64,000 nt of DNA from Iphione sp. A-MEVVRFRX5. Lineage: Eukaryota. This document shows, piece after piece, positions 6,066-48,391 of the stretch. The notes below the pieces were generated by a model, which was not told the DNA's origin, ran no database searches, and saw nothing but the letters and a program-made list of their open reading frames with translations. A program made the position numbers and the translations under genes. The stretch lies in NCBI GenBank assembly GCA_976226885.1, contig OZ320317.1, positions 100,378,001 to 100,442,000 of the forward strand. The letters run 5' to 3'. Each line of letters begins with the position of its first letter. Positions within the stretch are counted from its first letter, which is position 1.

Positions 6066-6896
6066 TATGGAAGGGTTTAATCTTATCCCGAGTACCCCTG
6101 GGTTTGAAACTGAAAAAGCAAGTACTCAGCATAAAAATGATAAAATCCTCAAATGCAGGCATCTCTAGATGATCAGGACAACATAAAGTCATTGACTATT
6201 GCTAGTTTAATACCAGAACTTTTGGAAAGTTGTGACATTTCATCCAAAAATGCGAAGAAAATTGGTGATGACCTGAGTGCTATACAGAATGAGTCATCAA
6301 AATGCACAGGTTTAATAAAGGAGCAGACAAGAAAAATTAGCACACTGGAAGATAAGGTAGCCAACCTAAAAAATCAAAACGATATGCTAAGTGAAGAACT
6401 TCGGCAGGTCCGAGAAGATAGTCCAAGCAGTAAAAATACAAGGTTGACCGACAAATTAGATCGACTGTCCCAATGAAATGGTATCTATATTGCCGGTTTG
6501 TCTATAATCGAGAAAAGTGATGTGTTGCCAGAGGTAATACATCTTTTGGAGTTGATTAACGTGACTATTGGTGCTGACGTCATAATGAAATATACCAAAC
6601 CAATCAGACAAAATGTGAATGGAGTGTCATTGATCTATATGAAATTTATACGAAACATAATAAAGATGGAGGTGCTACCGTCCTAAAAGGGACTGAAGGG
6701 TCAAAATATTTGGATAAACGAGGATTTAACCTCGAAGCAGCACAGTGCTCATGGCAAATGGAGAGGCATAATTCATCACACATGACAGAATCATCCTGAG
6801 ACAAAAGTCACACAAAGAGGCAACAGTCCAGTTATAGAAACTGTGTGGTATACAATAGACTCTATTGATCAGATCCCCAAACAATACTGTCCTTGA
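6066..6896 (+). pseudogene. LINE A ORF1 (coiled coil + RRM-like), disrupted
   Basis: Heptad coiled coil (6153-6476), NGIYIAGL, and KGQNIWINEDLT matching LINE B KGKDVWINPDLT; several stops. Confidence 0.75.
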
Positions 6897-7797
6897 GCTT
6901 TGCATGAAACGGAACTAGAAGGTCTATGTGTAGCACAAAGCCAACACCACAAGTCAGGTTCAATATCAGCCTTTTATTCTTCTCAGCAGCAACCAGTACA
7001 GCAAGTCAGCATATCTACAGCATGATGAAGGTGAGTCCAATGAGAGTGTCGGCTCAAGTGCTTTTATACTTGACAGTAGAACATTCTGCTTGTGTCAACC
7101 GGATATGACCATTTATTACCCGTCATGGATACAATGGGTCATTAAAGTCTAAGGTATCATGGCATCACTAGCGCCTGGTATCTTAGGTCTTGTAAGGTAT
7201 CACTGATAAGATCTACCTTGCTCTACCTCAGTGACTTGACATGAAATACAATAGCTTGAACACTGCTTTAAGTCTAGTTACATTCAACACTGATAAGAAG
7301 AATTGTGCAATAGAACACAAATTCCTGCCAGACAGACAAACTTTTTCATCAAGTACACGTTACTTTGCAGTAGGCTTTTCTTGTAGTATTTCTAACTATA
7401 CACTGTACATATCATAACATTATACCAATTGCACCAGTACTTAAAGTGTTATCTTGATAATGTCACATAATGTTATCTCACAGACATAAAATCATTTATT
7501 ATGCGGCTACTTACATTAGTTCAAACATTATACAATAGTACCCTCTTTTAAGAGCATTGAGTCCAATGACATCATCACCTTTATCCAAACTGTGTTACAT
7601 CCCTCCTTGGAAGTAATGCACAGCGTTAGAAGTTTATCCCCTTCCCCGACACAAAGTCCATCTGATCAGACTGGGCGCTGACCCCAAGTTTGCCTTATTG
7701 GCAAGCCGAGGCAAGACAAAAGCCATAAATGCACTTCAATATGCCTGGCTCATCGTACTGCAACAGAACCACACCTTTATCCAAACTGTGGTACATA
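6897..7797 (-). repeat. Inserted non-coding repeat fragment, homologous to 53400-54030 (probable LINE 3' UTR piece)
   Basis: Shares blocks TAGCACAAAGCCAACACCA, TTCTTCTCAGCA, AGTCAGCAT, GGTGAGTCC, TTACTTTGCAG with 53400-54030; interrupts LINE A between ORF1 and NADAR; ~25 bp direct repeat CACCTTTATCCAAACTGTG at ~7576 and ~7772. Confidence 0.7.
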
Positions 7798-8077
7798 TGT
7801 TTATTTGCTTGGAAGAGTTCACCCCTTCAAATCTTTATCCCTGTGAGCCTTTGAGAAAATAAAAAGTTTCACAGCGCTGAGCAAGCATATACGTATGCCA
7901 AATGCAAAAGTGCAGATGATCGTTCAAAAACCTCACTTAGCCTACACACAACCAACTACAAATTCATGATGACCTACCAAATGTTGAAGGCTGGGATAAA
8001 GTTAGAGTTGAGGTGATGGAGGAAAAATTTTTGGCAACATTCGGTCAAAACGATGAGTTGAAAGCAGAACTCATGAA
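7797..8077 (+). pseudogene. LINE A NADAR/YbiA domain, N-terminal half (frameshifted)
   Basis: Manual translation: SNLYPCE (7827-7847), KKFHSAEQAYTYAKCK, EGWDKVRVEVMEEKFLATFGQNDELKAEL; aligns with LINE B NADAR. Mostly absent from the ORF track. Confidence 0.85.
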
Positions 8078-9940
8078 GGGCATGTCAGACCAGAAGCAAG
8101 TAAGTCAAGATCAGCATGGCTTCCGCCAGGGACGCAGTACGGAGACAGCAGTAACCTGTGTCATAAACAGGACTCTGGAGGTGCTCAACATGGGCCTATA
8201 CTGCTGCCTTCTAGCATTCGATCTGAAGAAGGCCTTCGATTTGGTTCCTTCTTCAGGAGTGCTACGTAGGCTGGCCACGGCGGGAGCTAGTTCAAGGATC
8301 TTAAAACTGATTGCTAGTTACTTTCAAAATTGGCATCAGTTTGTGAGATGTGAGGGGGAGGTCTCGAGCCTGAGGAAGGTTGCACACGGTGTACCACAAG
8401 GGTCGATCTTCGGCCCCAGTGCCTTTACCATGATCATAGATGAACTGGCCGGCAAATTGCCATCTTATGCTAAGGTCACACTCTATGCAGACGATCTTAC
8501 GATAGTGGTGTCTGCAATGGACCTTCTGAGGCTGCGAGGATGTGCACAGTACGTCATCAACACAGTCGTCTCATGGTGCCGTTCAAACGGGCTACTACTC
8601 AGTGAAGGGAAATGTAGCTACATGGTGATGGGAAAGGCGGCTGCAACACCCCTTGATCTACACATCAACGACACTGAGCTGCAGATGGTACGGAAAATCA
8701 AATTGCTAGGTTACATGCTGGATGACAGGCTCACTTTTCGCGAGATGCTAAGAGACACAAAGGCGAAGATGTGGGGTGCGGCCCTGAAGATAGGACGGGT
8801 TAAAACACTACTTCCGATGGAGACACGCATGCGACTTTTCAGAGCCCTAGTTATGCCTCATCTGAACTACGGTGCAGCGACCCTTTTCAGCCTAACGGAG
8901 GCAGGTAAAGCTAATCTGCAGATTCACCTAAACAGGTGTCTCAGAGTGGGGGTCATGAGAGAAAGAGCTCTGACTGCCAAAGCACTCTGCCAGAGGTTTG
9001 GGATACCACGCGTGTCGGATCTCATTGAACAGAGAGCCATCAACGCTACACATCGACTGGTGCATCTGGAATTACTTCCACTGGCAGAGCATTCGCGGAC
9101 GAGGGTGGGATCATCATTGCTGATAAGAATCCCGAAGCCCAAGGGACTAAGGTTCATGAAAAGCTTAAGATATGGGGCCTGCACGGCTTGGAATGGGCTA
9201 CCGCGCGACGTCAAGTTGAGGGTAAAACCGCCAGGACGTCCAGGAAGAACGTAGAAGCAGGATGGTCGAAACAGCACGGAGGCAATTGGTTCACTGACGC
9301 TAGTATAGGATGATGGGGGTAACAACTATGGCTGCCTCCCCCAAACAACAACATCTGAAGGGGTCTTTTTGGGGAGGGGGTCTACTTCTTTCGTGGGTAG
9401 CAACTCTAGGGAGTACTGGGTTAGATGGCGGGGGCAGACATCCACACTACGAGGGTTCCACATGGTTGATGGTCACTGGGTTCTACTGCGTGGGTTGGGG
9501 ATCTACATATGGGGTTGAGCGTGTTGGGTATTAATCGTGAACGGTATTGTACAAGGGGGGCGATGAGTAGCTCAGTGTTACTTATTTATACACTGAACGT
9601 CATTCTTTCACTTGAGTGATAGTTGTGTAAAGTTCTGTATCGTCAAGCCTCTATGCAGCAACACATTATCTCTAGCAGTCAACAAAATCCCAGCAACACT
9701 GACATACTTGGGGGGCGTCTCCTCCTAGTTAGATTTGTGCGGGTATTGTTATAACCTGCTGTGCTGTACATATGTGTCTGTACCATACTGTTGTCTTGAT
9801 TGAAAACTGTCTGTCCTGTATTGTCATATTCTGTATGTACCTTGTTGTTATGTTCCATGTCCAATATTTTTCAATTGACCAAGGAGAACTTTGTAAATGT
9901 ACGAAGATTTGGTTGATCAATAAATTCAAATTCAAATTCA
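8078..9940 (+). mobile_element. 5'-truncated LINE (RT + 3' UTR) inserted into the LINE A NADAR domain
   Basis: RT QHGFR, FDLKKAFD, VPQGSIFGP, YADD; C-terminal RYGACTAWNGLP; AATAAA 9919-9924 then (TTCAAA)n tail; degenerate target-site duplication AACTCATGAA (8068-8077) / AACTAATTGAA (9941-9951). Confidence 0.9.
8085..9254 (+). CDS. Non-LTR reverse transcriptase (5'-truncated ORF2, open frame); same lineage as LINE C RT
   Basis: Uninterrupted RT motifs including YADD; close match to 50854..52191 (QHGFR..STETA, GLYCC, KIGRVK.LLP). Confidence 0.9.
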   Translation, partial: SDQKQVSQDQHGFRQGRSTETAVTCVINRTLEVLNMGLYCCLLAFDLKKAFDLVPSSGVLRRLATAGASSRILKLIASYFQNWHQFVRCEGEVSSLRKVAHGVPQGSIFGPSAFTMIIDELAGKLPSYAKVTLYADDLTIVVSAMDLLRLRGCAQYVINTVVSWCRSNGLLLSEGKCSYMVMGKAAATPLDLHINDTELQMVRKIKLLGYMLDDRLTFREMLRDTKAKMWGAALKIGRVKTLLPMETRMRLFRALVMPHLNYGAATLFSLTEAGKANLQIHLNRCLRVGVMRERALTAKALCQRFGIPRVSDLIEQRAINATHRLVHLELLPLAEHSRTRVGSSLLIRIPKPKGLRFMKSLRYGACTAWNGLPRDVKLRVKPPGRPGRT

Positions 9941-10120
9941 AACTAATTGAAACAGGAGACTCGGGACTGGTGGAGGCGACCTATCATAAATTCTGGGGTG
10001 CAGGGAAGAGGAAAAACCTGGGGTTTTCAAAGAACGGCGAATATCAGGGTGGAAAGTTGTTTAGGTCAATTTCTTGAGTGTGGAAGAGACCAGCTGTCAT
10101 CTGAGATGGAAGTGAACTAA
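9941..10120 (+). pseudogene. LINE A NADAR domain, C-terminal half
   Basis: LIETGDSGLVEATYHKFWGAG...GEYQGG then shifted GQFLECGRDQLSS*, matching LINE B LLSTGDKLLIEATQNDFWGAG...GKILESVRQHLSS*. Confidence 0.85.
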
Positions 10121-10153
10121 ATGCACTTGTGTGATTATATAACCTCTGTGTAT

Positions 10154-10161
10154 TATATAAA
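10154..10161 (+). promoter_or_regulatory. Candidate TATA box upstream of the LINE A SGNH ORF
   Basis: TATATAAA about 50 bp upstream of ATG 10204; no clear equivalent seen in LINE B or C. Confidence 0.3.
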
Positions 10162-10203
10162 GGGGAGAGCGGAGAAAGTATAGTTGTCACAGTCGGTCAC
10201 ATT

Positions 10204-10869
10204 ATGTCGCAGGACTCAATGGTTCATACCTTCATGTCTAGTCAAGCAATATGTCATCATTTTGGATGGAATTGTCATGTTCACTTATTTCCTGGAGTGA
10301 CAATTCAGGACTTATGTGCTCGAATTGTTGAGTATAAATGGGTACCATATCCGACAGTGATTATGCTGTGTGCAGGAGGTAACAATCTGACATGGATGGT
10401 TCGGATTAACGACGACCAGGGACAAAGCCTGAGTTATGTTGTTCCGAGATATTTTGACTCAGCTGCTGCTGTTGAAGAAATAGTAGTCCTTTTATTGGAA
10501 ACTAGGCGCATCATATAGATGCGCTACCCATATGCAGCTATTGTCTTTGGTACAATTTTTGTGTGTGGATTACCTAACATACAACAACCGCCTAAATGGG
10601 TACCGTGGTTCACCTAAGGTCATAAGACGAATCCAGTCAATATTATATTCGGTAACCACTGAAATAAATGGGCATATTGTTGGTATGAATCGCCAGTTTA
10701 GGATACCCACTCCTTGGACTGGGTCAGTAATTGGAACTCTTGGAACAACGGCCATCGGCGTCACAGGACAGGGCGTTACTTTGACGGCTGTCACCCGTCG
10801 GTCTACTGGAAATTCACACTGGTACAAGGCATGATAAATTCACTAGAACGTTTGATTAACGGAAATTGA
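10204..10869 (+). pseudogene. LINE A stand-alone SGNH/GDSL-type hydrolase ORF, disrupted
   Basis: FPGVTI (block II), CAGGNNL (block III), YFDGCHP (block V, in a shifted frame); strongly similar to LINE B ORF (DYLTYNNRLNGY, IPTPWTG). Confidence 0.85.
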
Positions 10870-11902
10870 TTTTTGCCCACTTTCATGACTTATTAACGTT
10901 AGGATGCTGCCTATGGTTTAATGTGAAGTTTAAATTTACGGTTTAATGTGAGTTTAATGTGACATCTAGTGAAGTTTCGCTAGTGATACGACACCTAGTA
11001 CTGGAGGATGGAGGAATATCATTATGTATCCAAGCTCAGTATGGTGCATTGGATGCTGACAACATTATCAGTGAATTTATCATGCGTCACTACCTTGTAT
11101 GATAGGTGATACAGATAGGGGGCAAGGTAATGTACCTTCACAATCTGATCTTGCTATATCTCACTACCCACTACGTTTGATGATAAATCATTGGAAAGGT
11201 AATGTACCTTCGTTGGCTGGTTGAGACTTAGTTTGTGACACAATATCATAAAGGTACGTGGTACTATTAATGATCGCTGACTTTTAACTTTAGAGTTAGT
11301 ATAGCATAAGTGTGTTGCATTCAATTATTGTCAAATTGTTGAGGCGAAGACACGTGTTATTGTTGATGAAGCCATACTCATGATTTATGAACAAATACCT
11401 GCAAAATAATACAAAGTTCCTATGGTATAATCGGTCATTTAGGTTATCATTACTATAGTATCTATTTCACAGCCACTTACCATGTGATTTATATTGTTGT
11501 TCTAAAACATTTATGTCGTTGGAAGTCTGTTTGATAAATTGCCTTAGTATGTATCACTTTGGGGGTTGTTCCACTTGATATTACAAGATTAAGTTCTGAT
11601 TTTACAACTTTATTTGTTCGACTATTTATAATGTGAAGATATAATTAAAACTGTTCTTGCTGAAATTAGCTTGTTATAGTATTTTATTTTTCTCCGACTG
11701 GGACCGGGAGTGGTGTCTATACACTGACCAATTAGATTAAACTAATTAAATTACTTCATTTGATTTTTGAGCATTAGACTAAAATTGTATTAATATATTA
11801 ATTCTTTATCACTGGTCGTATAGATTGATTTGCTACTAACACTGGTGTATGAGTCCTGTCTCCAATCAGGTACTGATGTGATGGTGTGTGTAATGAACTA
11901 CA

Positions 11903-14202
11903 ATGCATGATGTCAAACGCTTCGGGGGATTGACTATTCATCACTTGAATGTACGCAGCATCGAAGGTAAGATATCTGAACCTACTTTATCACTGAATAA
12001 CACAAACCCAGACCGTTTGGTTATTACAGAATCATGGTTGGATAAGGGGATACCCGATAGTCTGTTAAGATTTGTAAATTATTCTATTTTTAGGCAAGAT
12101 AGACTTACAGGTAGTGGGAGGGGGATATTAGTCTTTCTCTCAAATAAGTTAACCTCATATACAGACTCAATTGATTTCTGCGTACATTCGGGGGCTGATA
12201 TTGAGTGTCTAAGGCTTCATCTTAAAGTACCTTATAAAAAGGGATATATAATAGGATGCCTTTACAGACCTCCTAAAGGGAATATTACCAATCATATAAA
12301 CAGTGTGCAAGAGAAGATAGAGTACTGCACTGAACTGTTACAAAATAACAACATAATTCAGGTAGGTGACTTTATAAACTATAAATGCACGTGAGAGTAC
12401 CCCAAAGTGGATTAATGGTGAGTTATTAGATTTAATTAGGCAAAGACATCAGGTTTTGAACCGCTATCGTCGCTCATAGGCTTTGGAAGACAAGTTATCA
12501 GCCAAAATATTGCCTTATCGTGTGAGGAAACTGAGTAATAACTGCGTAATAACTAAAATATGACTACATAGAAGAAATACTGAGCCATACAGCCACTAAC
12601 CCGGGAAAATTTTGGTCCAGATTGAAACAGAGCTAGGGGTATTGTAAACCTTGAGTGAAGCCTGCTTTTAAAAAAATGACGGTTCCCTGCTAAGCACTGC
12701 GGAAATAGCTAAAGCTTTTAACAAACTTTTCTCTGAGATCAGATCAATGGTGTCACGTTCTCTACGAGACAGAGAATGCATAAGGGGAGCCCGAGGACAG
12801 ACTCATATGAACAGAGATACGTTCGTATGAGATGATAAAAGCTATGCTCTCACTTTCATCAAATAAGTCCAATCTAATATCATATCTGCCCATTGAATAA
12901 CTGAAACAAATCTTTTTGACTCTGTCAGATGAAGTAACAGAATTGTTTAATTGTTTGCTATCCAAATGTATTCCTGCCGACCTGGACAACTGGTGGTGTT
13001 AACGACCTAAATAATTACTCTCCAATCAGTCAACTGCCATTTATATCAAAAATCCTGGAAAAGATCATTTTTCAGAGACTAATGAATTATTTAGAGGACA
13101 ATAATCTATCATTTAACAATCAATATGGATTTAGTAGATCCCGGAGCACCGATAATGCTATTCATGCATTAAATAGGGATAATAGAAAAAAGATGCTTTG
13201 TTCACTTTCCAAAAGCATTCGAATCTGTCAGTCATTATGTGATTTTAGAAAAGTTAACTGAGATGGGGATGGAGGAGATTATACCCCTGATGAAATCATA
13301 CTTATGCAATCATTGGCCAGCTTGTGTGCTTGATGGTGAACAGTCAGGCAAAATGGCAATTCAGTGTGGGGTCCCTAAAGGATCCATTTTAGGGCCCTTA
13401 TTATTTCTCATATTCATTAAAAGTTTACCTGATGTCATAAGAGATAGTGTGTGCTATCTGTATCCAGACGATGTTGCCCTGATTTTGATTGCAACTTCCT
13501 TTCAGGAAGCGGAACAGGGCTTCAGAGAGACATTGACAAGTTGTTTGAATGGACGAAAAGGAATTGAAGTTGAGTGAATATGAAAAAAAAACCAGGTAAT
13601 GACTTTCTTTATGGTACCAAAAAGTAGGAAGTAAACATCACCATGAAACAAGAGGCACTTGAACAAGTAAGTGAGTTTAAATACCTTGGAGTTTACTTTT
13701 CCAGCAGCATGAATTGTGATGAACATATTAAAGGTATCCTTGTTAAAGGACAGCTAAAACTGTCACACCTTAGGGCGATTAAGCCTTGGGCTAATAGCTT
13801 ATCTCAATGAAAATAGTAAGAACCATGATTTTTCCAGTGTTGGAATACGGTAACTTTCTACTTGTAAGAACGACCAGTAGACACTTTCAGAAACTGATTA
13901 CCTTGCAAAGAGCCATCTATAGAGTGCATTGCTATCCTAACTCACTCCCAGCCAGATCGGAGATTGTCGACGAGATACTATATGCTCTGGACTCTACAAT
14001 ATTAAGATTGGGGTACATGCATAACAGCCTATCGGGTGCGAATCCGACATTAGTGGGTAATGTCAGGACTAGTAGTCTTGGTAGAAAGCACATACACTAT
14101 GTTATGCCTAAAAAGGAGGCTTTGAAATCGTCAATGAGCTTTAATTTTCAGAAACTATGGGAGAGTTCTAACCGTGGCCGAAACAAACTACATGTACAGT
14201 GA
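11903..14202 (+). pseudogene. LINE A ORF2 (APE endonuclease + RT), internally deleted and frameshifted
   Basis: APE motifs in 11903-12394; PKWINGELLDLIRQR linker; KILEKIIFQRL; PKGSILGPLLFLIFI; YPDD; C-terminal KSSMSFNFQKLW. Confidence 0.9.
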
Positions 14203-14388
14203 ACCTGAGAAGAAAGCAGTGTGGAAACAATTAAGATGAAGTAAGCGAATAATTGCTAACTATAAGGTGCCCTAAATAGTACATATCTGATATTATGAGC
14301 TGGAGAACACAGGTACAAAGCTGGTAAGGCCTGTTGGTACAACTCGAGGGCCGCTCTCCTGGTGCATATGATAGATATGGTGCATAGT

Positions 14389-22165: not shown

Positions 22166-22973
22166 TCGGGGTAAAGGTAGGGGAAGTTCTAAAAGGAAAA
22201 AAGAAAACAGCCCTGGTACCGAATTAAAAATGGACAAACAGGTCCTTGATGGTCTTTCACCCGAAATGAGGGTTCTTATGAATGAAATATTAGAAAACAG
22301 GCGAATTGCAAGTGAGGCATCGTCTGAAATAAGTTCTAGGCTAGAAAGTCTTGAATCTAAAGTTAGTAACTGTAATGCTACGGTGGGCATTAATACTAGG
22401 AGATTAGACACTGTCGAAGAACAATTAAAACAATTACAGAGTGAGAATGACTCACTTAAGGCTGAGGTTGCAGAATTAAAGAAAGTGAACCCAAAGGGTG
22501 CAGTCAGTAGAGACAAAGAATCATGGGATCGACGTTGGAGGCAGAATTGTGTGTTTATCGATGGCCTTAATGTGGAGGAGGATGAGGATTTGTTAAGCGA
22601 AGTTGTCTCATTCTTAGCAACCTTGGACTCAACTATTGAAGAGAGTGACATTGACGATGTTTTCCGTACAAATCGCAAAAATTCCTCTGGGAATCCAATA
22701 ATCTCAGTTAGATTCACTCGGAGCATTGCAAAGCAAAAGGTAATGAAAGCTAAAGGGCAGTTGAAAGGGAAGGACGTATGGATAAACCCTGATCTAACCC
22801 AAATCCAACGTAAGAACTTGGCTGTCGTTAAAAGTGCTTTAAGACATATCAGGTCTGTTGACGAGAATGTTGAAGTGAAACTGAAGGGGGACAAATTATC
22901 TGTAGATGGTACCATCTATACTGCTGAGAATCTATATAAGTTACCAGATCACCTGTGGCCCCCCCTGAGTTGA
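22166..22973 (+). CDS. LINE B ORF1: basic N-terminus, coiled coil, RRM/CTD-like region (first internal ATG 22230)
   Basis: KRKKENSPG; heptads; NCVFIDGLNVEEDEDL, DIDDVFR, PIISVRF, VWINPDLT, LSVDGTIY typical of L1-type/Crack-type ORF1 proteins. Confidence 0.85.
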
Positions 22974-23449
22974 TGGATGTTGAAGGTGAAAACGTGTTGT
23001 TTTCTGGGAAAAAATCACCGTTTTCGAACTTATACCCATGTGAACTCAGCTGGGATGGGAAAAAGTTCAGTAATGTCGAGCAGGCCTACACTTATTCTAA
23101 GTGTAAGGCCACTGGTATTAAATCGAAGCAATCACTAAGCGAACATACAACTGACTACAAGTCATTGAAAACCATCAGAAGTGACTTTCCCCCTATTGAT
23201 GAATGGGAGAAAACAAAGCTAGAAATCATGGGCGACCTGATTTTCAGTAAGTTCTCCTCTGATGATAAATTAAAGGAAATCTTGCTATCGACAGGGGATA
23301 AACTACTGATTGAAGCAACTCAAAACGACTTCTGGGGGGCAGGTGTAACTAAAAAGTCGAAATCACTACATGATAACACTTTCAAAGGGCAGAATCATCT
23401 GGGTAAGATTTTAGAAAGTGTAAGGCAGCATTTATCGTCAGATGCCTAA
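22955..23449 (+). CDS. NADAR/YbiA-family domain (C-terminal domain of ORF1, separated here by a 1-nt shift in a C7 run)
   Basis: FSNLYPC, F-S-N-V-E-Q-A-Y..K, W, KF...LKEILLSTGDKLLIEA...FWGAG, GQNHLGKILESVR: the full NADAR motif set. Confidence 0.92.
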   Translation: MAPPELMDVEGENVLFSGKKSPFSNLYPCELSWDGKKFSNVEQAYTYSKCKATGIKSKQSLSEHTTDYKSLKTIRSDFPPIDEWEKTKLEIMGDLIFSKFSSDDKLKEILLSTGDKLLIEATQNDFWGAGVTKKSKSLHDNTFKGQNHLGKILESVRQHLSSDA

Positions 23450-23562
23450 TTGCTGTGATTTTACGAATGACCGGTTCGGTCGGCTGAGGTAACCGTACTG
23501 GTCACACCGCTTTTGACACTGCATTGGCTGCCACACACCGTGTCATAGGCCCAGACGGTATT

Positions 23563-24246
23563 ATGGAGTACAATATGTCTATTCATGTTTTTGCCTCGTC
23601 TCATGGTAGGAGGCTTCAGGAATGTTTTCAAAGGCTGGGTTGGACGGTTTTCGTCCATGTTTATCCTGGAGCACGCCTGCGTGATATCTGTGAGCATATT
23701 TTGCTCGAGGACTGGTGGCCAATCCCAGACCTGGTGATAATTTATGCAGGAGGTAACGATATGACGAAGCTGATACGTATGGCTACACCTGAGGGAGGAA
23801 GCAAAAGGTATTTAGTGCCTCGATTTAATAACGCTGTTGTAGCTGCAGACACTGTTGAGTACTATTTATGGACAACAAGAACTGCAGTGCAAACAAAATA
23901 CCCATTGGCAAACATTATGTATTGTACCCTGTGTGCTGTGGACTATTCAACATATAACAATAGGTTGAATGGTTATGACTCTGGTTCTGCCCGTCGTATT
24001 TATGTTCAGGAGTTACTCAACGCCAGTATGATTCTACTGAACCAACGAATAGTCTCTGTGAACAAAACTTATGGGATACCCACGCCATGGACTGGTTTAG
24101 TAGTGCATAGTCGTAACAATGGGCGTTGGTGACATAGGCTATGCAGATACTACGATGGGTGCCATCTGCGTATTTATTGGAAAATGAGGCAACCGGAGAA
24201 GATAATTTCAGCTATTACTCATCTGTGGTATGGTGTGAGGTGGTGA
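23563..24246 (+). CDS. Stand-alone SGNH/GDSL-type hydrolase ORF (one in-frame TGA at 24130-24132)
   Basis: Block I VFASSHG, block II YPGARL, block III YAGGND, block V YDGCHL found by reading through the single stop. Confidence 0.85.
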
Positions 24247-25157
24247 ATGCATTGTTGAACGGTAATCATAGTCATGAGATTGTGATGACTGATTTGCAAA
24301 GACATTAATGTAGGTTTATTTGATTAACTGACATGGTACATGGTATTCGATTATACGGTACTTTAATGGACGTGGTTCCTGAATGTACGTTTGTATAACT
24401 GATTTATTATGTATATTTAGGGCAATATTTGATTGAATTATGTTTTAATGGACATGGTTCCTGAATGTACTTGTGTACAATCAATTACTGCCAACATTTA
24501 CACTAACGTTATGTATTTACTTATTGTTCCTCAGTTAAGTAATGAGCTATGAAGTGTAGATTTATAATGAAAACTGATATGGACGTGGTTCCTGACAGTA
24601 ATTTGCATTACAAATCATTACAACTAAGATTGAGTATTATGTACTAATTACACTATTTCTCATTAACAAATTGTATTTGTATCTTGTTTATTTGGATTGT
24701 TATCACGAACACTCGCAGCTGATGTTGTTGTGGCTTATAAATTCACCTGACTTATCTGTTAGTAGATTGCTCTATACGTGGGTGGTTGTAAGCGTATTTG
24801 TTTCTGAGAAAATCGTTTGTTCTTAATAATAATATTTGTAACTGTTTTCGAGATTAAACCATAAGTAATGCTAAACTTATATGATTTGAAGCTCTGAGTT
24901 TGACTGTTGCTATTGATTGGAGCGGCGTATGGCATCTCCAGCCAATCTTAATGTTTTATTAACTATCTAATTTGACAAAATTATTAATTTCGTCGAATTT
25001 GTGTACCTTAATTACTTAAACTTTACTACTTTTGTTTGTGTACGTTGAATTTAGTTAACTTGATGCTTTGCTACTTTGCATTGTTCACTATACTAATTAT
25101 TGTTATTATGAGCTCTATTACCAGGCGATATGAAGATATATTGATGGTTGATAATGT

Positions 25158-27992
25158 GTGATGCCAACTATCGGAAGGATTTCTGGCTATGCAATTTATC
25201 ATGTTAATATCAGGAGTTTGATGGGTAAGTGGCATGAATTTGAATACTTTATGTTTAAGTTACAACCAGATGTGATGATTCTGACAGAAACATGGTTGAC
25301 GCCTGCAATACCAAATGAATTAATTAAACTTCATGGATATGTAAATTTAAGACATGATAGATTATACGGTAGGGGTGGGGGTATCCTAGTGCTAATAAAA
25401 GACCGTTATAAGTCGGTTTTCAAGGAAATTTCCGACTGGTCGATAAGTGATGTTAATACTGAATCGCTCTGGTTGATGTGTATATATAGTAACAATAGAA
25501 AAGTATTTATAGCCTTTACATACAGGCCTCCAAGTGAAAATATTACTCTGTTTCAAGAGTATCTACATGAAAGATTACAACAAATAAGGGAAACATCAAC
25601 TAATTCCTCAACCATTATAATTGATGATCTTAATGTAGACTGGCAGAAACCGTCTACATTTAAGAGGAAAATAATGGAAATATGTACTTTATTTGGTGCA
25701 CAGCAACTCATACGGTCCCCAACTAGAGTAACTAGTACATCTCATACCACTATTGACTTATGTATATCGAATGTTGAAACAGACTTATATGCTAATGTAA
25801 TTGAGTGTAACTTAAGTGATCACCATATGATTGAAATCATATTAATGATTCCCCCTGGGCCAAGTTACACAAAAATCAAGCAAGAATTTAGAAAATACAA
25901 TGAGATTGACCTGAGTGAATTGGAGCAGAGATTAATATTTTTAGAAACTGATACTTTGTTTAATGAAAGAGATGTTGACTCTAAATGGGAGATGTTGGTG
26001 TCAATGATCTCGACTGTTATAGATTCTCTGGCTCCAATAAAAACATCTATGCAAAGGGAACACGCACCTATATGGGTTGATGAAGAATATCTTGAATTAA
26101 TTAATCAGAAACATTGTGCAGTACGTAAATACCGAATAACGGGTAATTTAGAGGACAAGTTAGTACTGAGACTATTGAAGTACCAAGTACGTAAGAAAGG
26201 AAATGACCTTAAACGCAATTATTTAAGTAGCAGAATCAACAGCCACGTTCGAAGTCCAAAGAAATTTTGGCAATGTCTCTTAAAATCATTAAGTTATGCT
26301 AAAAGTCAAAATAAGATAGCACTGAAAATCGATGGTATACTAACTGATAATGAACTTGAGGTTGAGGAATGTTTTAATATCTTTTTTAATCAGGTTGGTG
26401 CCAGAGTAGCAATGCAGATCGAGGAGGTTCCTCTGGAAGTAAATAGAGTAACTAACAACAGATTTAAATGGAACTTAATTACTCTTGAGGAGGTGTCGTC
26501 TGCTATCTGTGACATGCCTAACAATAAAGCCAGCCTTGTAAAAGATATTCCGGGTAAATTGCTGAAAGAAATATTACTGACATTAGGGCTAGAATTCTTG
26601 GATTTGTTAAATAAATGTGTGGAAACATCGAAGCTACCCGTACCATGGACTACAGCCAAACTAACCCCGCTATTTAAATCGGGCAGGAAAGATGACTTAA
26701 ACAATTATCGCCCCATTAGTCAATTGCCTATGCCAGCTAAAGTCTTAGAAAAGTTATTGTATCAACGCATTATGTTGTATTTGGAAGAGAATAAAGTAAT
26801 TTCTGGCTGCCAGTTTGGTTTTAGGAAAAACAGTGGGACAGGTGATGCAGTGTATATATTGCTGCGGGATATTCACACAGCCTTGAATACTGGAGATAAG
26901 GTGGTTGGGTGCTTTGTAGACTTCTCCAAGGCATTCGACTCGGTGAGTCATGAAGTAATTTGTTTAAAGATGCGGGAGCTGGGTTTGGACGTGCTGGTGC
27001 CGCTAATGGAGAATTATCTAGGTAACAGGTGGCAAGAAACTGTCATTGGCTTAGCAAGATCCAGTAAATGTAGAGTTACATGCGGGGTGCCTCAGGGGTC
27101 CATCCTGGGCCCCCTGCTGTTTTTGATATTTATTAACGATCTCCCCACCATTCTAGAACATGTTAGGTGTATAATGTATGCAGATGACCTGGTATTACTC
27201 TCCCACTCGAAGGATATTAATATAACGAAGTCGAATCTGCAGGATGATGTAAATTCCCTAGCAAGGTGGTGTAATAAGAACAGAATATTAATCAACGTTA
27301 AAAAGACTAAGGTAATGTCATTCTATTATGCAAAGAGGGGTCAACCAGATAGCATGCTCATTAGATTTGGAGACCACGTATTTGAACACGTAACTAAATT
27401 TAAGTACCTTGGGATAATTTTGAGTAGTAATCTAAGGTGGGATAATCATATTACTGAACTCCTCAGGAAGGCTTATTTGAGACAGTTACATTTTAGGCAC
27501 ATCAGAAGGTTCATAGAATTAAAACACGCGATAATTCTACTGCGTGGAGTCATATTACCGGCAGTAGACTATGGGGTGTTTTTGATAACTGAATTTAAAG
27601 GAAGAATAACTGATAGATACATCACTGCACGTAGGTCCCTATACAGAACTTGTTTTCACCCGAATCCCCCTCCAACCCGTGCTGAATTAGTTGAAGAATT
27701 AACAGGAATCAGGGACTCCATATTATTGAGATTAGGCTACAAGCATGAGGTGTGTGGCAGAGCTAATACAACCCCAAGAGTAGTGGTGAACACAAGACAG
27801 AGTCTGAGGAGACATATACCCGTGATTTGGCCACAACGAGAGGGTTATAAAAGGAGCTTTTATTACAAATTTCAACTAATATGGCGTTCACTAACACCCC
27901 AGGAAAGTCATTATAATTTACTTCAGATGACGGCTCTATGGAAAAGATTAAGAAGAAGTAAAAGGTTGGTGTGCAATTACTTTGTTGGTTAG
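25158..27992 (+). CDS. LINE B ORF2: APE endonuclease + reverse transcriptase, 944 aa uninterrupted
   Basis: HVNIRS, LTETWL, YRPP, DDLN (usually GDLN), TIDL, SDH; NYRPIS, QFGFR, DFSKAFD, PQGSILGP, YADD, KYLG; C-terminal KRSFYY...W. Confidence 0.97.
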   Translation: MMPTIGRISGYAIYHVNIRSLMGKWHEFEYFMFKLQPDVMILTETWLTPAIPNELIKLHGYVNLRHDRLYGRGGGILVLIKDRYKSVFKEISDWSISDVNTESLWLMCIYSNNRKVFIAFTYRPPSENITLFQEYLHERLQQIRETSTNSSTIIIDDLNVDWQKPSTFKRKIMEICTLFGAQQLIRSPTRVTSTSHTTIDLCISNVETDLYANVIECNLSDHHMIEIILMIPPGPSYTKIKQEFRKYNEIDLSELEQRLIFLETDTLFNERDVDSKWEMLVSMISTVIDSLAPIKTSMQREHAPIWVDEEYLELINQKHCAVRKYRITGNLEDKLVLRLLKYQVRKKGNDLKRNYLSSRINSHVRSPKKFWQCLLKSLSYAKSQNKIALKIDGILTDNELEVEECFNIFFNQVGARVAMQIEEVPLEVNRVTNNRFKWNLITLEEVSSAICDMPNNKASLVKDIPGKLLKEILLTLGLEFLDLLNKCVETSKLPVPWTTAKLTPLFKSGRKDDLNNYRPISQLPMPAKVLEKLLYQRIMLYLEENKVISGCQFGFRKNSGTGDAVYILLRDIHTALNTGDKVVGCFVDFSKAFDSVSHEVICLKMRELGLDVLVPLMENYLGNRWQETVIGLARSSKCRVTCGVPQGSILGPLLFLIFINDLPTILEHVRCIMYADDLVLLSHSKDINITKSNLQDDVNSLARWCNKNRILINVKKTKVMSFYYAKRGQPDSMLIRFGDHVFEHVTKFKYLGIILSSNLRWDNHITELLRKAYLRQLHFRHIRRFIELKHAIILLRGVILPAVDYGVFLITEFKGRITDRYITARRSLYRTCFHPNPPPTRAELVEELTGIRDSILLRLGYKHEVCGRANTTPRVVVNTRQSLRRHIPVIWPQREGYKRSFYYKFQLIWRSLTPQESHYNLLQMTALWKRLRRSKRLVCNYFVG

Positions 27993-28060
27993 TTTGGGTG
28001 TTAGGCAATAGTCTCTTAATGTTAAATGTCTGTTATGATTATTGTCGTTGACCTAATACT

Positions 28061-28460
28061 ACAGGATTTGATCCTTGAAGTATTTTTGACAGCTGAGAAG
28101 AATTGTATTATGATCAGGATCTAATCCTGAAAATCTGTGAATTTCAAAGATGGAACAAAATGAAATTGGTATTTGTGCACATAACTTAAAACTCTATTAA
28201 ATTGAAATACTGTTATAATATATAACCATGTATTAGGGCAGGATTTGATCCTTGACTCTATATACAAAAACATTGTGAATTGTATTCATATTAATCGCGG
28301 CAGGATTTGATCCTTGACCGTATAATTTAAACACTATTAAATTGAAATACTGTTATAATATATATCTGTATATTAGGGCAGGATTTGATCCTTGACTCTA
28401 TATGCAAAACATTGTGAATTGTATTCATATTCATCGCGGCAGGATTTGATCCTTGACCGT
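28061..28460 (+). repeat. LINE B 3' UTR repeats: six CAGGAT-NNN-ATCCT palindromes, including a ~140-bp tandem duplication
   Basis: Copies near 28062, 28115, 28239, 28301, 28379, 28440; duplicated unit ~28190-28330 / 28330-28460. Confidence 0.85.
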
Positions 28461-30149
28461 ACTGAGGCCATGATATATGGAGTAATTTCAATTAATCCAG
28501 CACTCCTGATGGATTGTTAGTTGATAATCGACATCACCTAATTGGATATGTATGATATTATTCGCTGGCTAAAATAGAGCTCTTGTAAGGTTAATATATA
28601 TGAAGATAACTTACTAACCCTTTATTGTTGTTTTCTAAGACTGTTCGGGCAGAAAAGTATTATGAATTCTGAATGCAAATACATATTGTTGTATAGATTT
28701 CAGAAATAAACAAATTGAAACCTTAAAAAAAAACAATAAAAAGTATACTCGAAATGGTCTCACAATTGCAAAATCTAAATAAAAATGTAATATTCGATAG
28801 ATCTCAATGATATCAGAAAATGGAATTCACCAGATACTTTGAATCATCATAAATGAGTTAAAATTACTTTAAGAATGTTTCTTATAACTTTATAGAGCAG
28901 ACTCAATTTTTTGGACTTGATTAACTATGTCAAAGGTCTAGTTGTTGCTGACTATTTTAATTGTATAGTTAAATTGTACTGTATTGACTTTCCACTGAAT
29001 AAAAGAATCTGATCAAGAAGATTCTATGGATAATCAATAATTTCTTAATGTTATTGGAAATATCTCACATGTACATTGTTAATCTACATCCCGAAAAAAG
29101 AGTAAAGTCAACTTGACATAGGGAATTAGTAATGCACTCATGATATAAGCAATATTTATGATTTTTAGAAAATAATGCAAATAACCTATATTTTATTGCT
29201 TCCCTTTGTAATGACCTATTGGATTTGAAAATAACCTGGAAATAAAATTAGGAACAAAATGAACAATAAATTTAACTGCTGATTATAATTTCATGTCCTC
29301 ATCATTTTGAAAGTTAATCTATATCCTTGAGTTAGGCAGAACCGATCAATTTTGAGTAACTTCCAACCATTTTTATCATGATTATATAAGGGGTTGTACA
29401 CAAAAGATTAATCATCTAGTCATGTTTGACATCTGCTATTATCTTCCATTATAATGTAACATGTCTCTGGGCTAAGATTTTGAAATACCACTACACTTCC
29501 ATCACCTTAAGAGGAAGAACAGCGTTTTTACATAATCACATTTATATTCTTTTGGTTTGGGTTGTAATATCAATCTTACAATGTATGATTACGAAGTCTT
29601 TGTGAGCAACACCTGCCATAATAAAATTGCTTATTTCCTAGACATAGTATTAAAAGGGTTTTCTCCATTTATTATTTTTTTCTTGGTTGGGCTTCTTAGA
29701 AGCAACCATATCAGTTTGTTTGTTTTATGTTAGAACAGAGACAGTGGGCATCATCAATTATACGTTTCTTGATTTTCAAGTGGAATGTCCATTGCATCTC
29801 TTCATGGTGTTCCTCCCATGGAGCCAGAGCCTTGCAAGAGGCTCTTTGAATGGTTGCATAGCAGCTTGGGTAATTTGCTCTTGTCAACGTAAGGTATCCT
29901 CTGCTAATTACACCAACACATTCTGAGGTGTTGAATAGGTGATATTGAAGATTCTGTCAGAGAGCTTCAATATGTTGGACTGTTAGATCGTTCCTAACAC
30001 CTGCAAGATCTTCTTCAACACCACACTCTGTGAGTCACCAAGCTCATCCTGGCCCTGGCAGAAGAAAATAGCATCCGTCTTTCAAGGGCCCCAATATCAA
30101 ATTTCTGATTATCTTTCTTAGCTGGCCAATATAAGCCAGTTCCTGCCAC

Positions 30150-45600: not shown

Positions 45601-45672
45601 TCCTCAGATGTCTCCGATTATTGTATCAAATGCAAATACATTTTAAAGTACAAAACTTTTTCATTTTGAATT

Positions 45673-45683
45673 CAAGATGGCGG
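45673..45683 (+). promoter_or_regulatory. YY1-type motif CAAGATGGCGG at the LINE C 5' end
   Basis: Matches the YY1 consensus found at the 5' end of L1-type internal promoters; begins a CpG-richer stretch 66 bp before the ORF1 ATG. Confidence 0.6.
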
Positions 45684-45738
45684 ACGAGTAGACACGTATC
45701 GCGATTGCTCTCCCGGTCGAACGTCAAAAAACTGTGTT

Positions 45739-47598: not shown

Positions 47599-47684
47599 GC
47601 TCTGAACAAGTGATACTTATTATGATTTACTAGATTGGTTACTTTCGCTGATGTTACTGCTTCTTTTCTCACCCAGCGAGGATC

Positions 47685-48391
47685 ATGCGTTACCCGCCGT
47701 CGGTACGTGCGAGCCACTCAACCAGAATACTCGTCATCGCGGACACTCGTAGTTCGCCTGCTTTCAAGGAACTGGAGTCTCAGCTGCATCTACTCCCTCC
47801 AACCAACATCCACCTCATCACCCTGAAGCGGGCATCCTACAAAAACATAGCCCGCTGGTTGTCGTATACGGAGGTAGTGCGATATCACCTGGTATTGATT
47901 GCTGCTGGGATGTATGATTGGGTGAGAAAGGAATCTGGGCTTTGGGTGGTACATTCTGGCTCTCCTGCAGAATATGCCCGAAAGCTGGACTTCTACCTGG
48001 AGAAAATCCGCGGCCACTGTAGTGACATCGATGGTTCAGGCCCCCACTTGGTGCTATCATCTGCTGCTGGTGTTGACTTGGCGGGATTAGCTCCAGATAT
48101 CAGTGACGACATTGAGCAATTCAAGATTGACTGTGCAATCTCTATTCAAAACATGCGCTGTGATTCTTCCTCCAGTGAGATTGGTGCTGTCTCTCCTCAC
48201 CGGTTAGCATTCCAAGTGGTGGCTCGATTACCCACAACTTCGACCATCTACGCTCTGATGGTTTCAGACCGAAGGATGGCACACTAAATGAGTGGACATA
48301 TTCGGTCCGTCTATTCCTTCATGACTACATTAGGTTATATGGTCACTTCCACTTGGAGAACAATGGCCCCCTAGTGCATGTCCACTACTAA
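47685..48391 (+). pseudogene. LINE C stand-alone SGNH-like ORF (divergent; one frameshift)
   Basis: ILVIADTR (block I-like), LVLIAAGMYD (block III-like), shifted-frame HNFDHLRSDGFRP (block V-like); occupies the same position as in A and B. Confidence 0.65.

What the first reader, a model, noticed from the sequence alone, without database searches (positions are those of the whole stretch)
22166..28734. A LINE family with an unusual gene set: ORF1-NADAR + separate SGNH hydrolase ORF + APE-RT
Seen: LINE B has, in order, a coiled-coil/RRM-like ORF1, a complete NADAR/YbiA domain, a separate SGNH ORF with all four S-G-N-H blocks, a 911-bp spacer and an intact 944-aa ORF2. The same order recurs in LINE A and LINE C. 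Established: CR1/L2-group LINEs are normally one- or two-ORF elements, and SGNH esterases are known as a domain inside ORF1. NADAR proteins are N-glycosidases (YbiA acts on riboflavin intermediates; DarT1-associated and phage NADARs remove ADP-ribose from guanine in DNA). I know of no described LINE carrying NADAR, but I cannot check this. Inference: the ORF1 RNP delivers a de-ADP-ribosylating enzyme to the RNA/cDNA intermediate as a counter-defence or repair aid during target-primed reverse transcription, and the hydrolase is a third gene product.
Basis: partly seen in the sequence, partly recalled or inferred. Interest (0 to 1): 0.95.

Follow-up and report, generated by a model that had tools for sequence, protein, structure and literature searches.

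The report
LINE carrying NADAR and esterase genes
This is a real 6.6-kb jumping gene (a LINE retrotransposon) whose RNA-binding protein carries an extra enzyme domain (NADAR) of the kind that removes ADP-ribose from DNA and RNA bases, plus a separate esterase gene, a gene set that recurs widely in public sequence data, has had only a passing mention in print and has never been tested.

Summary
LINE B is a discrete insertion (about 22189-28750), bounded by a paralogous empty site. It encodes, in order:
- an L1-type ORF1 (coiled coil, RRM, CTD);
- a YbiA-family NADAR domain (Pfam 7e-28) with its catalytic residues intact;
- an SGNH-hydrolase middle ORF;
- a 911-bp spacer;
- an intact APE-RT ORF2.

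Corrections for this copy: NADAR lies in the -1 frame relative to ORF1, at a C7 run, and the esterase ORF has an in-frame TGA before its His block.

Decayed LINEs A and C keep the same order. In public data, 93 of the 150 closest NADAR relatives are in-frame ORF1-NADAR fusions. Contigs from two other samples repeat the three-ORF layout, and two samples show a two-ORF version without the esterase. NADAR therefore belongs to the element and is under selection.

The counter-defence or repair role (removing base-linked ADP-ribose from LINE RNA or cDNA) is plausible but untested. The CR1/L2 assignment is unresolved. One 2025 paper notes in passing NADAR in the ORF1 of oyster "Tx1" LINEs, so this is a new variant rather than a new kind.

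First readers of this scan flagged ORF1-NADAR LINEs many times elsewhere in this genome.

The parts
22189..28750 (+). LINE B, a full insertion of about 6.56 kb. Boundaries are approximate to within a few bases. A possible short target-site duplication is GAAGTT (22183-22188) / GAAATG (28751-28756).
   Evidence: The left flank 21001-22157 is collinear with 58292-59654, and the right flank 28764-29387 with 59696-60335, in a paralogous tandem-duplicated unit that lacks the element.
22230..22973 (+). ORF1: a short N-terminus, a coiled coil, and an L1-type RRM and CTD. The frame stays open upstream to 22080/22017, which lies in flanking DNA.
   Evidence: Coiled-coil Pfam hits. ORF1 profile E=2.5e-39. 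The AF2 model of homologue P0138 matches the human L1 ORF1p trimer 2yko (E=2e-8, TM 0.71).
22959..22965 (+). A run of seven C at the ORF1/NADAR junction, where the reading frame shifts by -1. The ORF1 stop TGA (22971-22973) overlaps an ATG in the NADAR frame (22973-22975), giving UGAUG.
   Evidence: Sequence read directly and frames. No significant RNA structure lies downstream (z=-1.09). Relatives are in-frame fusions.
22940..23449 (+). NADAR (YbiA-family) open frame. The domain spans about 23009-23434. The catalytic Glu (VEQ), Lys (YSK) and Glu (IEAT), and the D-x-W-G motif, are all present.
   Evidence: Pfam PF08719 7e-28. PDB 8bau and 2b3w alignments. Residue mapping follows PMC11543638 section 12. 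Conservation counts.
23563..24246 (+). Middle ORF, an SGNH hydrolase (esterase): block I FASSHG, block II YPGA, block III GGND, block V YDGCH. It is interrupted by an in-frame TGA at 24130-24132.
   Evidence: A profile built without window sequences gives E=5e-13 across blocks I-V when the stop is read as X. The fold of homologue L003 is SGNH.
24247..25157 (+). A 911-bp T-rich non-coding spacer with about 82-bp imperfect repeats (24344-24603). LINEs A and C have spacers of similar length (1030 and 1166 bp) but with no sequence similarity to it.
25158..27992 (+). ORF2, 944 aa, intact: APE endonuclease and reverse transcriptase (YADD). The likely start is the ATG at 25161.
   Evidence: Pfam RVT_1 7.9e-36 and Exo_endo_phos_2 6e-8. 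The RT matches R2 and L1 ORF2p structures.
27993..28750 (+). 3' UTR: five copies of CAGGATTTGATCCTTGA, a 140-bp tandem duplication (28181-28461), an AATAAA signal and an A-rich end.
6144..14269 (+). LINE A, a decayed and diverged copy with the same order: ORF1 6144-6893, NADAR halves 7798-8100 and 9883-10071, SGNH 10201-10866, ORF2 11897-14269. It carries two nested insertions: a repeat at about 6926-7409 and a 5'-truncated LINE RT at about 8100-9880.
   Evidence: tblastn, frames, profile hits, repeat match to 53525-53870.
45670..52188 (+). LINE C, a much more diverged and decayed copy. ORF1 runs in frame into NADAR (stops at 47224 and 47440; catalytic Glu lost). The middle ORF is 47652-48284 and ORF2 is 49451-52188.
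   Evidence: The ORF1_C alignment to P0146 crosses that protein's ORF1/NADAR boundary.
59654..59696 (+). Paralogous empty site corresponding to the LINE B insertion point.

Best explanation
LINE B is a young, nearly intact copy of a non-LTR retrotransposon lineage with an expanded gene set.

Gene set:
- The first protein is an L1-type ORF1p (coiled coil, RRM, CTD: a multimeric RNA-binding chaperone) with a YbiA-family NADAR N-glycosidase domain fused to its C-terminus.
- A second, separate ORF encodes an SGNH esterase.
- The third ORF encodes the APE endonuclease and reverse transcriptase.

In this particular copy, the ORF1-NADAR fusion is most likely broken by a 1-nt length change in a C7 run. 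The esterase is most likely broken by a nonsense mutation.

Proposed mechanism (inferred): ORF1p coats the element's own RNA, so the fusion places many NADAR active sites on the LINE ribonucleoprotein. There NADAR hydrolyses base-linked ADP-ribose (guanine-N2-ADP-ribose, possibly on other bases) from the LINE RNA, the nascent cDNA or the nicked target DNA. This keeps the template readable for translation and target-primed reverse transcription, acting as a counter-measure to nucleic-acid ADP-ribosylation or as a repair aid. The esterase is an auxiliary protein, comparable to the lipid-binding esterase of CR1/L2 ORF1p.

Shown here: the domains, their order, the fusion, conservation of catalytic residues, and recurrence across samples.

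Inferred: the substrate, and the benefit to retrotransposition. I put identity and architecture at about 0.95 and the de-ADP-ribosylation role at about 0.4.
For: The unit is one insertion:
- A paralogous empty site bounds it.

Domain identity:
- NADAR: Pfam 7e-28; PDB 8bau and YbiA.
- The AF2 model of the in-frame homologue P0138 (pLDDT 83.5) matches 8bau (1.3e-11), YbiA (6.7e-9) and the human L1 ORF1p trimer 2yko (2e-8) in a single chain.
- Middle ORF: SGNH fold (Foldseek 2.6e-7, VIA Z up to 17, including PAF-AH at Z 14.8).

The fusion is the family norm:
- Of the 150 best NADAR matches among 1.84 billion representatives, 93 have an ORF1 CTD directly followed by NADAR. Sixty of these have a near-full ORF1.
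- All ORF1-linked NADARs fall on one side of a tree split (support 0.80).

Conservation consistent with selection:
- Among 50 ORF1-linked NADARs, catalytic Glu is kept in 50/50, Lys or Arg in 47/50, the YbiA-type Glu in 47/50 and Trp in 46/50.
- NADAR is the best-conserved segment of 29 ORF1-NADAR proteins (33% identity, against 25-26% for RRM/CTD).

Recent activity elsewhere:
- P0020 is found with an identical sequence and the same neighbouring 964-aa APE-RT ORF at four loci of one assembly.

Gene order recurs:
- The three-ORF order recurs in L002, L003 and L006.

Published biochemistry:
- NADARs, including YbiA-type and eukaryotic ones, remove ADP-ribose from guanine in DNA and RNA (PMC11543638, PMC11125620, PMC11833690).
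Against: - No substrate, no host nucleic-acid ADP-ribosyltransferase and no expression data were examined, so the mechanism rests on family biochemistry alone.
- YbiA itself also acts on riboflavin intermediates, and a nematode NADAR protein works in trans-splicing (PMC9303266, listed; title only, not read), so other roles are possible.
- In LINE B, NADAR is out of frame with ORF1 and the esterase carries a stop, so this copy may make neither product as designed.
- Some relatives (L004; the P0020 loci) lack the esterase ORF, so it is dispensable for at least part of the lineage.
- The conservation figure for NADAR is inflated because the proteins were retrieved by NADAR similarity.
- The NADAR tree is built on a short domain and has modest support.
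Confidence: 0.45

Rival explanations
1. The NADAR domain is catalytically active but does something other than erase ADP-ribose from nucleic-acid bases. Possibilities include hydrolysing a small-molecule N-glycoside or NAD-derived metabolite near the RNP, or acting in RNA processing or RNA binding for the LINE transcript.
For: The first characterised activity of E. coli YbiA is on riboflavin-pathway intermediates (stated in PMC11543638). PMC12477816 suggests processing of RNA intermediates for TE-borne NADARs. A nematode NADAR protein is a trans-splicing factor (PMC9303266, listed; title only, not read). Structure searches also show NADAR fused to many unrelated enzymes.
Against: All tested NADARs, including YbiA and a eukaryotic one, hydrolyse guanine-ADP-ribose on DNA and RNA. 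It is hard to see why a metabolite clean-up role would be selected in a retrotransposon chaperone. The residues conserved are the ones that contact ADP-ribose.
Confidence: 0.25
2. In LINE B the frame offset is functional rather than damage. NADAR would be made either by -1 ribosomal frameshifting on G_CCC_CCC (giving some ORF1-NADAR fusion alongside plain ORF1p) or as a separate 158-aa protein by termination-reinitiation at the overlapping UGAUG (22971-22975).
For: The two frames overlap over only about 31 nt, and that stretch contains a C7 run. The ORF1 stop and an in-frame ATG of NADAR overlap as TGATG. Stop-start overlaps are used by some LINEs (SART1; this is from my own knowledge and was not checked here).
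Against: Relatives, including decayed LINE C in this window, are plain in-frame fusions. The heptamer is not canonical. No stable downstream RNA structure was found (z=-1.09; 28 of 200 shuffles fold as well). A frameshifted reading normally meets a stop soon, so the overlap can arise by chance. Homopolymer length errors are also common in assemblies.
Confidence: 0.12
3. The NADAR domain is a non-catalytic remnant, a structural or binding module, or neutral baggage carried along with ORF1.
For: Within this window only one of the three copies has an intact NADAR. LINE C has lost the catalytic Glu and Trp. No activity has been measured.
Against: The catalytic Glu, Lys/Arg and Glu are kept in 47-50 of 50 highly diverged ORF1-linked NADARs. 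The domain is the most conserved part of the protein. The losses in LINE C come with stops and general decay.
Confidence: 0.08
4. NADAR and SGNH are host genes or unrelated insertions that merely lie between LINE fragments in this window.
For: ORF1, NADAR, SGNH and ORF2 are in four separate reading frames or segments in LINE B, with a 911-bp non-coding gap before ORF2.
Against: An empty site bounds the whole unit. The same order is found in LINEs A and C and in L002, L003 and L006 from other samples. There are 93 in-frame ORF1-NADAR fusions in public data.
Confidence: 0.02

Closest known systems
NADAR-bearing ORF1 proteins of Crassostrea gigas 'Tx1' LINE families in Repbase, and the NADAR domain in the Pol of an Ectocarpus Gypsy lineage (noted in PMC12477816, Genome Biol 2025)
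   Same: A YbiA-family NADAR domain as part of a retrotransposon protein. For the oyster elements, it is specifically in the LINE ORF1 protein.
   Different: That paper gives only a passing remark: no architecture, no esterase ORF, no distribution and no residue analysis. Those elements are labelled Tx1 (L1 group). The clade of the present element is unresolved, and its ORF2 shows no C-terminal zinc-knuckle motif. I could not compare sequences because Repbase is not available here.
Human/mammalian LINE-1 ORF1p (type II ORF1p: coiled coil, RRM, CTD; PDB 2yko)
   Same: The N-terminal 320 or so residues of the ORF1-NADAR homologue fold like the L1 ORF1p trimer subunit (Foldseek 2e-8, TM 0.71). 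The LINE B ORF1 belongs to the same sequence profile.
   Different: L1 ORF1p has no enzymatic domain. Here a NADAR domain follows the CTD. Sequence similarity is too low for a Pfam Transposase_22 hit.
Esterase-type ORF1p of CR1, L2 and RTEX LINEs (ZfL2-1 ORF1p esterase, PDB 4c1b; Kapitonov and Jurka 2003; Schneider et al. 2013, PMC3905857)
   Same: An SGNH/PAF-AH-like esterase encoded upstream of ORF2 in a LINE. The fold is confirmed.
   Different: In those elements the esterase is itself ORF1p (coiled coil plus esterase), and none of them carries an RRM. Here the esterase is a stand-alone second ORF downstream of an RRM-type ORF1p. A direct match to 4c1b did not appear among the listed hits, so common descent with the CR1/L2 esterase is untested.
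YbiA-family NADAR hydrolases (E. coli YbiA 2b3w; Phytophthora nicotianae NADAR 8bau), and the DarT1-NADAR antitoxins and phage gp30.3 NADARs that counter DarT1
   Same: Same fold. Same catalytic Glu and Lys, and the Glu in the last strand that defines the YbiA family. The phage case is a precedent for a mobile element carrying an orphan NADAR as counter-defence (PMC11257639 abstract).
   Different: Those proteins are free-standing or fused to metabolic enzymes. Here the domain is fused to a retrotransposon RNA chaperone in an animal genome, and no partner ADP-ribosyltransferase is known.

Membership tests
NADAR superfamily, YbiA family (Pfam PF08719) | Significant match to the NADAR profile above the curated cut-off | tested here: met
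   98.4 bits against a cut-off of 35.1, E=7e-28, covering profile positions 9-162 of 163. PDB 8bau 3.8e-8 and 2b3w 2.5e-6.
NADAR superfamily, YbiA family (Pfam PF08719) | Catalytic Glu and Lys (E43 and K50 of P. nicotianae NADAR), and a Glu in the last strand (E125) that separates the YbiA family from the BC4488 (Asp) and phage (His) NADARs | tested here: met
   The alignment to 8bau places VEQ Glu, YSK Lys and IEAT Glu at these positions (residue roles from PMC11543638 and PMC11125620). They are kept in 47-50 of 50 ORF1-linked relatives.
NADAR superfamily, YbiA family (Pfam PF08719) | N-glycosidase or ADP-ribosyl-base hydrolase activity | not testable with these tools
   Needs enzyme assays.
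SGNH/GDSL hydrolases | Flavodoxin-like SGNH fold | tested here: met
   Tested on the intact homologue from L003 (AF2 pLDDT 76.6). Foldseek matches sialate O-acetylesterase at 2.6e-7. VIA Z is 15-17, with PAF-AH at Z 14.8. The LINE B ORF aligns to the family profile at E=5e-13. The LINE B protein itself was not modelled.
SGNH/GDSL hydrolases | Catalytic Ser (block I), Gly (II), Asn (III) and Asp-x-x-His (V) | tested here: met
   LINE B has FASSHG, YPGA, GGND and YDGCH; LINE A has SS, GGNN and FDGCH. Some relatives have replaced the Asn (L002 GTCD, L006 GGICN).
SGNH/GDSL hydrolases | Uninterrupted coding sequence in this copy | tested here: not met
   An in-frame TGA at 24130-24132 lies before block V. 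LINE A has an Arg codon at that position.
L1-type (type II) ORF1p | Coiled coil followed by an L1-like RRM and CTD | tested here: met
   The model of P0138 has a helix at 87-173, then RRM and CTD, and matches 2yko/2ykp/2ldy (2e-8 to 5e-7). The LINE B ORF1 fits the same profile at E=2.5e-39. Pfam Transposase_22 itself gives no hit.
APE-type non-LTR retrotransposon (LINE) | APE endonuclease plus reverse transcriptase in one ORF, and insertion as a discrete unit | tested here: met
   Pfam Exo_endo_phos_2 6e-8 and RVT_1 7.9e-36. Empty-site comparison. The target-site duplication is only tentative.
CR1/L2 (Jockey-superfamily) LINEs | Placement of the RT within the CR1/L2 clade by phylogeny with reference elements | not tested
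   No Repbase or Dfam references are available. The best database relatives are unnamed and only 28% identical.
CR1/L2 (Jockey-superfamily) LINEs | 3' end without a poly(A) tail, typically ending in short tandem repeats (PMC13343379 states that poly-A is unique to Zenon among CR1-group elements) | tested here: inconclusive
   LINE B ends with AATAAA followed by an A-rich stretch (TTAAAAAAAAACAATAAAAAG). This is a single copy and the exact end is not fixed.
L1/Tx1 group LINEs | Close RT similarity to L1 ORF2p and a C-terminal Cys-His zinc-knuckle motif in ORF2 (the motif requirement is from my own knowledge) | tested here: not met
   The RT matches R2 proteins better (7e-13) than human L1 ORF2p (1e-8). 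No zf-RVT or other zinc-finger hit. The last 120 residues hold three widely spaced Cys.

The most novel reading that the evidence does not exclude
Invertebrate genomes use base ADP-ribosylation of RNA or DNA as a restriction mechanism against mobile elements, and several unrelated mobile elements have independently acquired NADAR 'erasers' as counter-defence. These would include LINE ORF1p here, Gypsy Pol in brown algae, and possibly a PolB-NADAR element flagged elsewhere in this genome. This would be a eukaryotic parallel to DarT1 defence and the orphan NADARs of T4-like phages. The LINE ORF1-NADAR fusion would then be the first retrotransposon-encoded anti-restriction enzyme of this type.
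Probability: 0.2. Interest if true: 0.9.

Novelty: new variant of a known kind. Interest (0 to 1): 0.7.

Why it matters
LINE ORF1 proteins are regarded as RNA chaperones. The only enzymatic ORF1p type described so far is the esterase type, and Schneider et al. 2013 (PMC3905857) called it unique in that respect.

This lineage differs in two ways. It puts a second kind of enzyme, a nucleic-acid de-ADP-ribosylase-type N-glycosidase, on an L1-like chaperone, and it carries the esterase as a separate gene. It is also not a curiosity of one copy: about two-thirds of the closest NADAR relatives in a library of 1.84 billion proteins are such fusions, and some families look recently active.

Two consequences follow:
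- A share of the 'animal NADAR proteins' listed in surveys may in fact be retrotransposon proteins.
- The biological role of base ADP-ribosylation in animals is an open question. It becomes testable with a retrotransposition assay comparing wild-type and catalytic-mutant NADAR.

Tried and rejected
1. DNA self-comparison of LINE B against the window found no other copy at nucleotide level. The relatives are visible only at protein level.
2. A word-based homologue search with ORF1 found nothing. The exhaustive search with NADAR was what revealed the fusions.
3. Pfam alone does not establish the SGNH call (E=0.028 for LINE B; no hits for L002 and L003). A PDB sequence search gave only noise. Structure prediction was needed.
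4. Programmed frameshifting: no downstream structure was found. It is kept only as a minor rival.
5. Clade assignment. Named homologues, Atlas cluster names and PDB comparisons did not resolve CR1/L2 against other clades. The APE domain alone matched nothing in the PDB.
6. Organism identity. Papers were searched for the sample accessions, an exact-protein look-up was run and the scan's own notes were searched, all blank. The host MFS ORFs sit nearest to echinoderm and chordate clusters, which is only a hint. AlphaFold DB rows came back without organisms.
7. Spacer conservation. LINEs A, B and C have spacers of similar length but no detectable sequence or coding similarity.
8. A first midpoint-rooted clade test of the NADAR tree, with a weak ORF1 label, failed. 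With profile-based labels and unrooted splits, all the ORF1-linked domains fall on one side.
9. Direct-repeat search for a target-site duplication found nothing. The boundaries came instead from the paralogous empty site.

Full report
**What is there.** The + strand between 22080 and 27992 holds four open segments.
- A 297-aa ORF (22080-22973).
- A 164-169-aa frame (22940-23446).
- A 202-214-aa frame (23488-24129).
- A 944-aa ORF (25158-27992).

Pfam gives only coiled-coil noise for the first. The second is a strong NADAR hit (PF08719, E=7e-28, 98 bits against a 35-bit cut-off, nearly full profile coverage). The third is a weak GDSL hit (E=0.028). The fourth has APE and RT domains. NADAR also matches the two solved family members: Phytophthora nicotianae NADAR 8bau (3.8e-8) and E. 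coli YbiA 2b3w (2.5e-6).

**It is one mobile unit.** The window contains a tandemly duplicated host segment with MFS-transporter ORFs.
- The left flank of LINE B (21001-22157) is collinear with 58292-59654.
- The right flank (28764-29387) is collinear with 59696-60335.
- So a paralogous site lacks the whole 6.6-kb block.

It also shows that ORF1, NADAR, the hydrolase ORF, the spacer and ORF2 arrived together. It moves the probable ORF1 start to the ATG at 22230, because the longer open frame runs into flanking DNA. The 3' end has an AATAAA signal and an A-rich stretch.

**Two defects in this copy.**
- *Frame break.* NADAR is in the -1 frame relative to ORF1. The frames overlap for about 31 nt around seven consecutive C (22959-22965).
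- *Stop in the esterase.* The hydrolase frame carries a TGA at 24130-24132, after which the same frame continues with YYDGCH, the His block. LINE A has an Arg codon at that position.

With X at the stop, the ORF fits a profile built only from non-window homologues from block I through block V (E=5e-13). The four SGNH blocks are therefore present, but the ORF is not intact.

**The same order in LINEs A and C.** tblastn and profile searches recover ORF1, NADAR, middle ORF and ORF2 in order at 6144-14269 and 45670-52188, at 23-59% amino-acid identity to LINE B or less.
- LINE A is decayed. It carries an unrelated repeat between ORF1 and NADAR and a 5'-truncated LINE inside NADAR.
- In LINE C the ORF1 frame runs straight into the start of NADAR. 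Its alignment to P0146 crosses that protein's ORF1/NADAR boundary. However, its NADAR has two stops and has lost catalytic residues.

**The fusion is the rule outside this window.** An exhaustive search with the NADAR segment found 9072 proteins at E<=0.001.
- Among the best 150, a profile of ORF1 finds 95 carriers.
- In 93 of them the ORF1 CTD is immediately followed by NADAR, and 60 have a near-full ORF1.
- All 29 aligned full-length examples have a Pfam NADAR hit.
- The AlphaFold model of one of them (P0138, pLDDT 83.5) has a disordered N-terminus, a long helix, RRM, CTD and then NADAR. In the PDB it matches 8bau (1.3e-11), YbiA (6.7e-9) and the human LINE-1 ORF1p trimer 2yko (2e-8, TM 0.71).
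- The LINE B ORF1 fits the same profile (E=2.5e-39).

The protein is therefore an L1-type ORF1p with a C-terminal NADAR. The offset in LINE B is most simply a one-base change in the C run, or an assembly error. Frameshifting lacks a supporting RNA structure (z=-1.09). A UGAUG stop/start overlap at 22971-22975 is noted as a minor alternative.

**Signs of selection and activity.** Residue roles are taken from PMC11543638 and PMC11125620.
- LINE B keeps the catalytic Glu, Lys and the YbiA-type Glu, together with D-x-W-G.
- Among 50 ORF1-linked NADARs these residues are kept in 50, 47 (Lys or Arg) and 47 cases, and Trp in 46.
- NADAR is the best-conserved segment of the 29 aligned proteins. There is a retrieval bias in its favour.
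- All 96 ORF1-linked domains lie on one side of a tree split (support 0.80). The other side holds multi-NADAR proteins, including one from a prokaryotic mobile-element context.
- One family (P0020) occurs with an identical protein and an adjacent 964-aa APE-RT ORF at four loci of one assembly. That suggests recent transposition.

**The middle ORF.**
- Contigs L002 and L003 (one sequencing run) and L006 (another assembly) carry ORF1-NADAR, then a 192-240-aa ORF homologous to the LINE B middle ORF, then APE-RT.
- The model of the L003 protein (pLDDT 76.6) is an SGNH hydrolase. Foldseek matches sialate O-acetylesterase at 2.6e-7, and VIA Z reaches 17, with PAF acetylhydrolase at 14.8.
- L003 has GDS, GIND and DGLH motifs. 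LINEs B and A keep Ser, Gly, Asn and His. Some relatives have replaced the Asn.
- L004 and the P0020 loci have no such ORF, so the esterase is a variable module.

**Comparison with what is known.**
- Esterases are known as ORF1p in CR1, L2 and RTEX LINEs. Schneider et al. report that none of those carries an RRM, and call esterase-type ORF1ps unique in having an enzyme function (PMC3905857).
- ORF1 types are modular across CR1/L2 (PMC4120745).
- Extra esterase ORFs occur in LTR elements (PMC5408684).
- Full-text searches for NADAR or YbiA together with retrotransposon or ORF1 terms found a single relevant paper. PMC12477816 notes in passing NADAR in the ORF1 proteins of several oyster 'Tx1' LINEs in Repbase and in Ectocarpus Gypsy Pol, and speculates on RNA processing.

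NADAR-in-LINE is therefore not entirely new. The following appear undescribed in the searchable literature: the three-gene architecture, the L1-type chaperone context, the breadth of the family and the conserved catalytic site.

**Clade.** I could not place ORF2.
- Its best relatives are unnamed and only 28% identical.
- The RT is closer to R2 structures (7e-13) than to L1 ORF2p (1e-8).
- There is no zinc-knuckle hit.
- ORF1 and the A-rich tail look L1-like.

**Mechanism.** Published work shows that NADARs of several classes, including YbiA and a eukaryotic enzyme, remove ADP-ribose from guanine in DNA and RNA but not from phosphate ends. T4-like phages carry orphan NADAR-type antitoxins against DarT1. 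Fusion to a cis-acting RNA chaperone would concentrate this activity on the LINE RNP. I therefore favour erasure of base ADP-ribosylation from LINE RNA, cDNA or target DNA (about 0.4). Another N-glycosidase or RNA-processing role comes next (about 0.25).

**Earlier notes of this scan.** First readers flagged ORF1-NADAR LINEs repeatedly elsewhere in this genome, and also a PolB-NADAR fusion. I treated these as leads only. Those concerning this window were checked and agree.

Noticed in passing
window 19484-20326, 37782-38534, 56704-57618: Three long MFS_1 (monocarboxylate-transporter-like) ORFs spaced about 18.5 kb apart indicate a tandemly duplicated host gene array. The first and third units are collinear around LINE B at about 66-78% identity, which supplied the empty site. 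The nearest Atlas clusters are from echinoderms and chordates.
   Followed up: partly
window 28062-28456: The 3' UTR of LINE B holds five exact copies of CAGGATTTGATCCTTGA (a small palindrome, AGGAT..ATCCT) and a 140-bp tandem duplication (28181-28461, 93% identity).
   Followed up: no
window 24344-24603: The spacer between the esterase ORF and ORF2 holds three imperfect repeats with a core ATGGACGTGGTTCCTGAATGTAC, at 82- and 131-bp spacing. LINEs A and C have spacers of similar length (about 1.0-1.2 kb) with no sequence similarity.
   Followed up: partly
window 22971-22975: The ORF1 stop and an ATG in the NADAR frame overlap as TGATG. This is a stop-start arrangement of the kind some LINEs use for translational coupling. 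Here it probably arose by chance after a frameshift.
   Followed up: partly
window 6926-7409 and 53525-53870: An unrelated repeat family (73-79% identity between the two copies) is inserted in LINE A between ORF1 and NADAR. A 25-bp direct repeat lies at 7576-7600 / 7772-7796.
   Followed up: no
window 7941-9251: A 5'-truncated LINE (RT domain, Pfam 1.3e-27) is nested inside the NADAR domain of LINE A and splits it into two halves.
   Followed up: partly
L005 10001-11071 (Logan SRR31646608); proteins P0001-P0013: The highest-scoring NADAR matches are proteins with 2-7 tandem NADAR domains. One example is a 4240-aa protein with seven. Another is a two-domain protein in a prokaryotic phage- or conjugative-element-like gene neighbourhood (Peptidase_M78, RNase H, LysM/G5).
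   Followed up: no
L002 326-2212 and L003 388-2418: These ORF1-NADAR proteins carry a further 200-300 residues of Gln/Pro/Ser-rich low-complexity sequence after NADAR. LINE B has no such tail.
   Followed up: no
window 39215-43714, 62161-62358 (-): Further LINE ORF2 fragments of other families. The window is dense in non-LTR retrotransposon remains.
   Followed up: no
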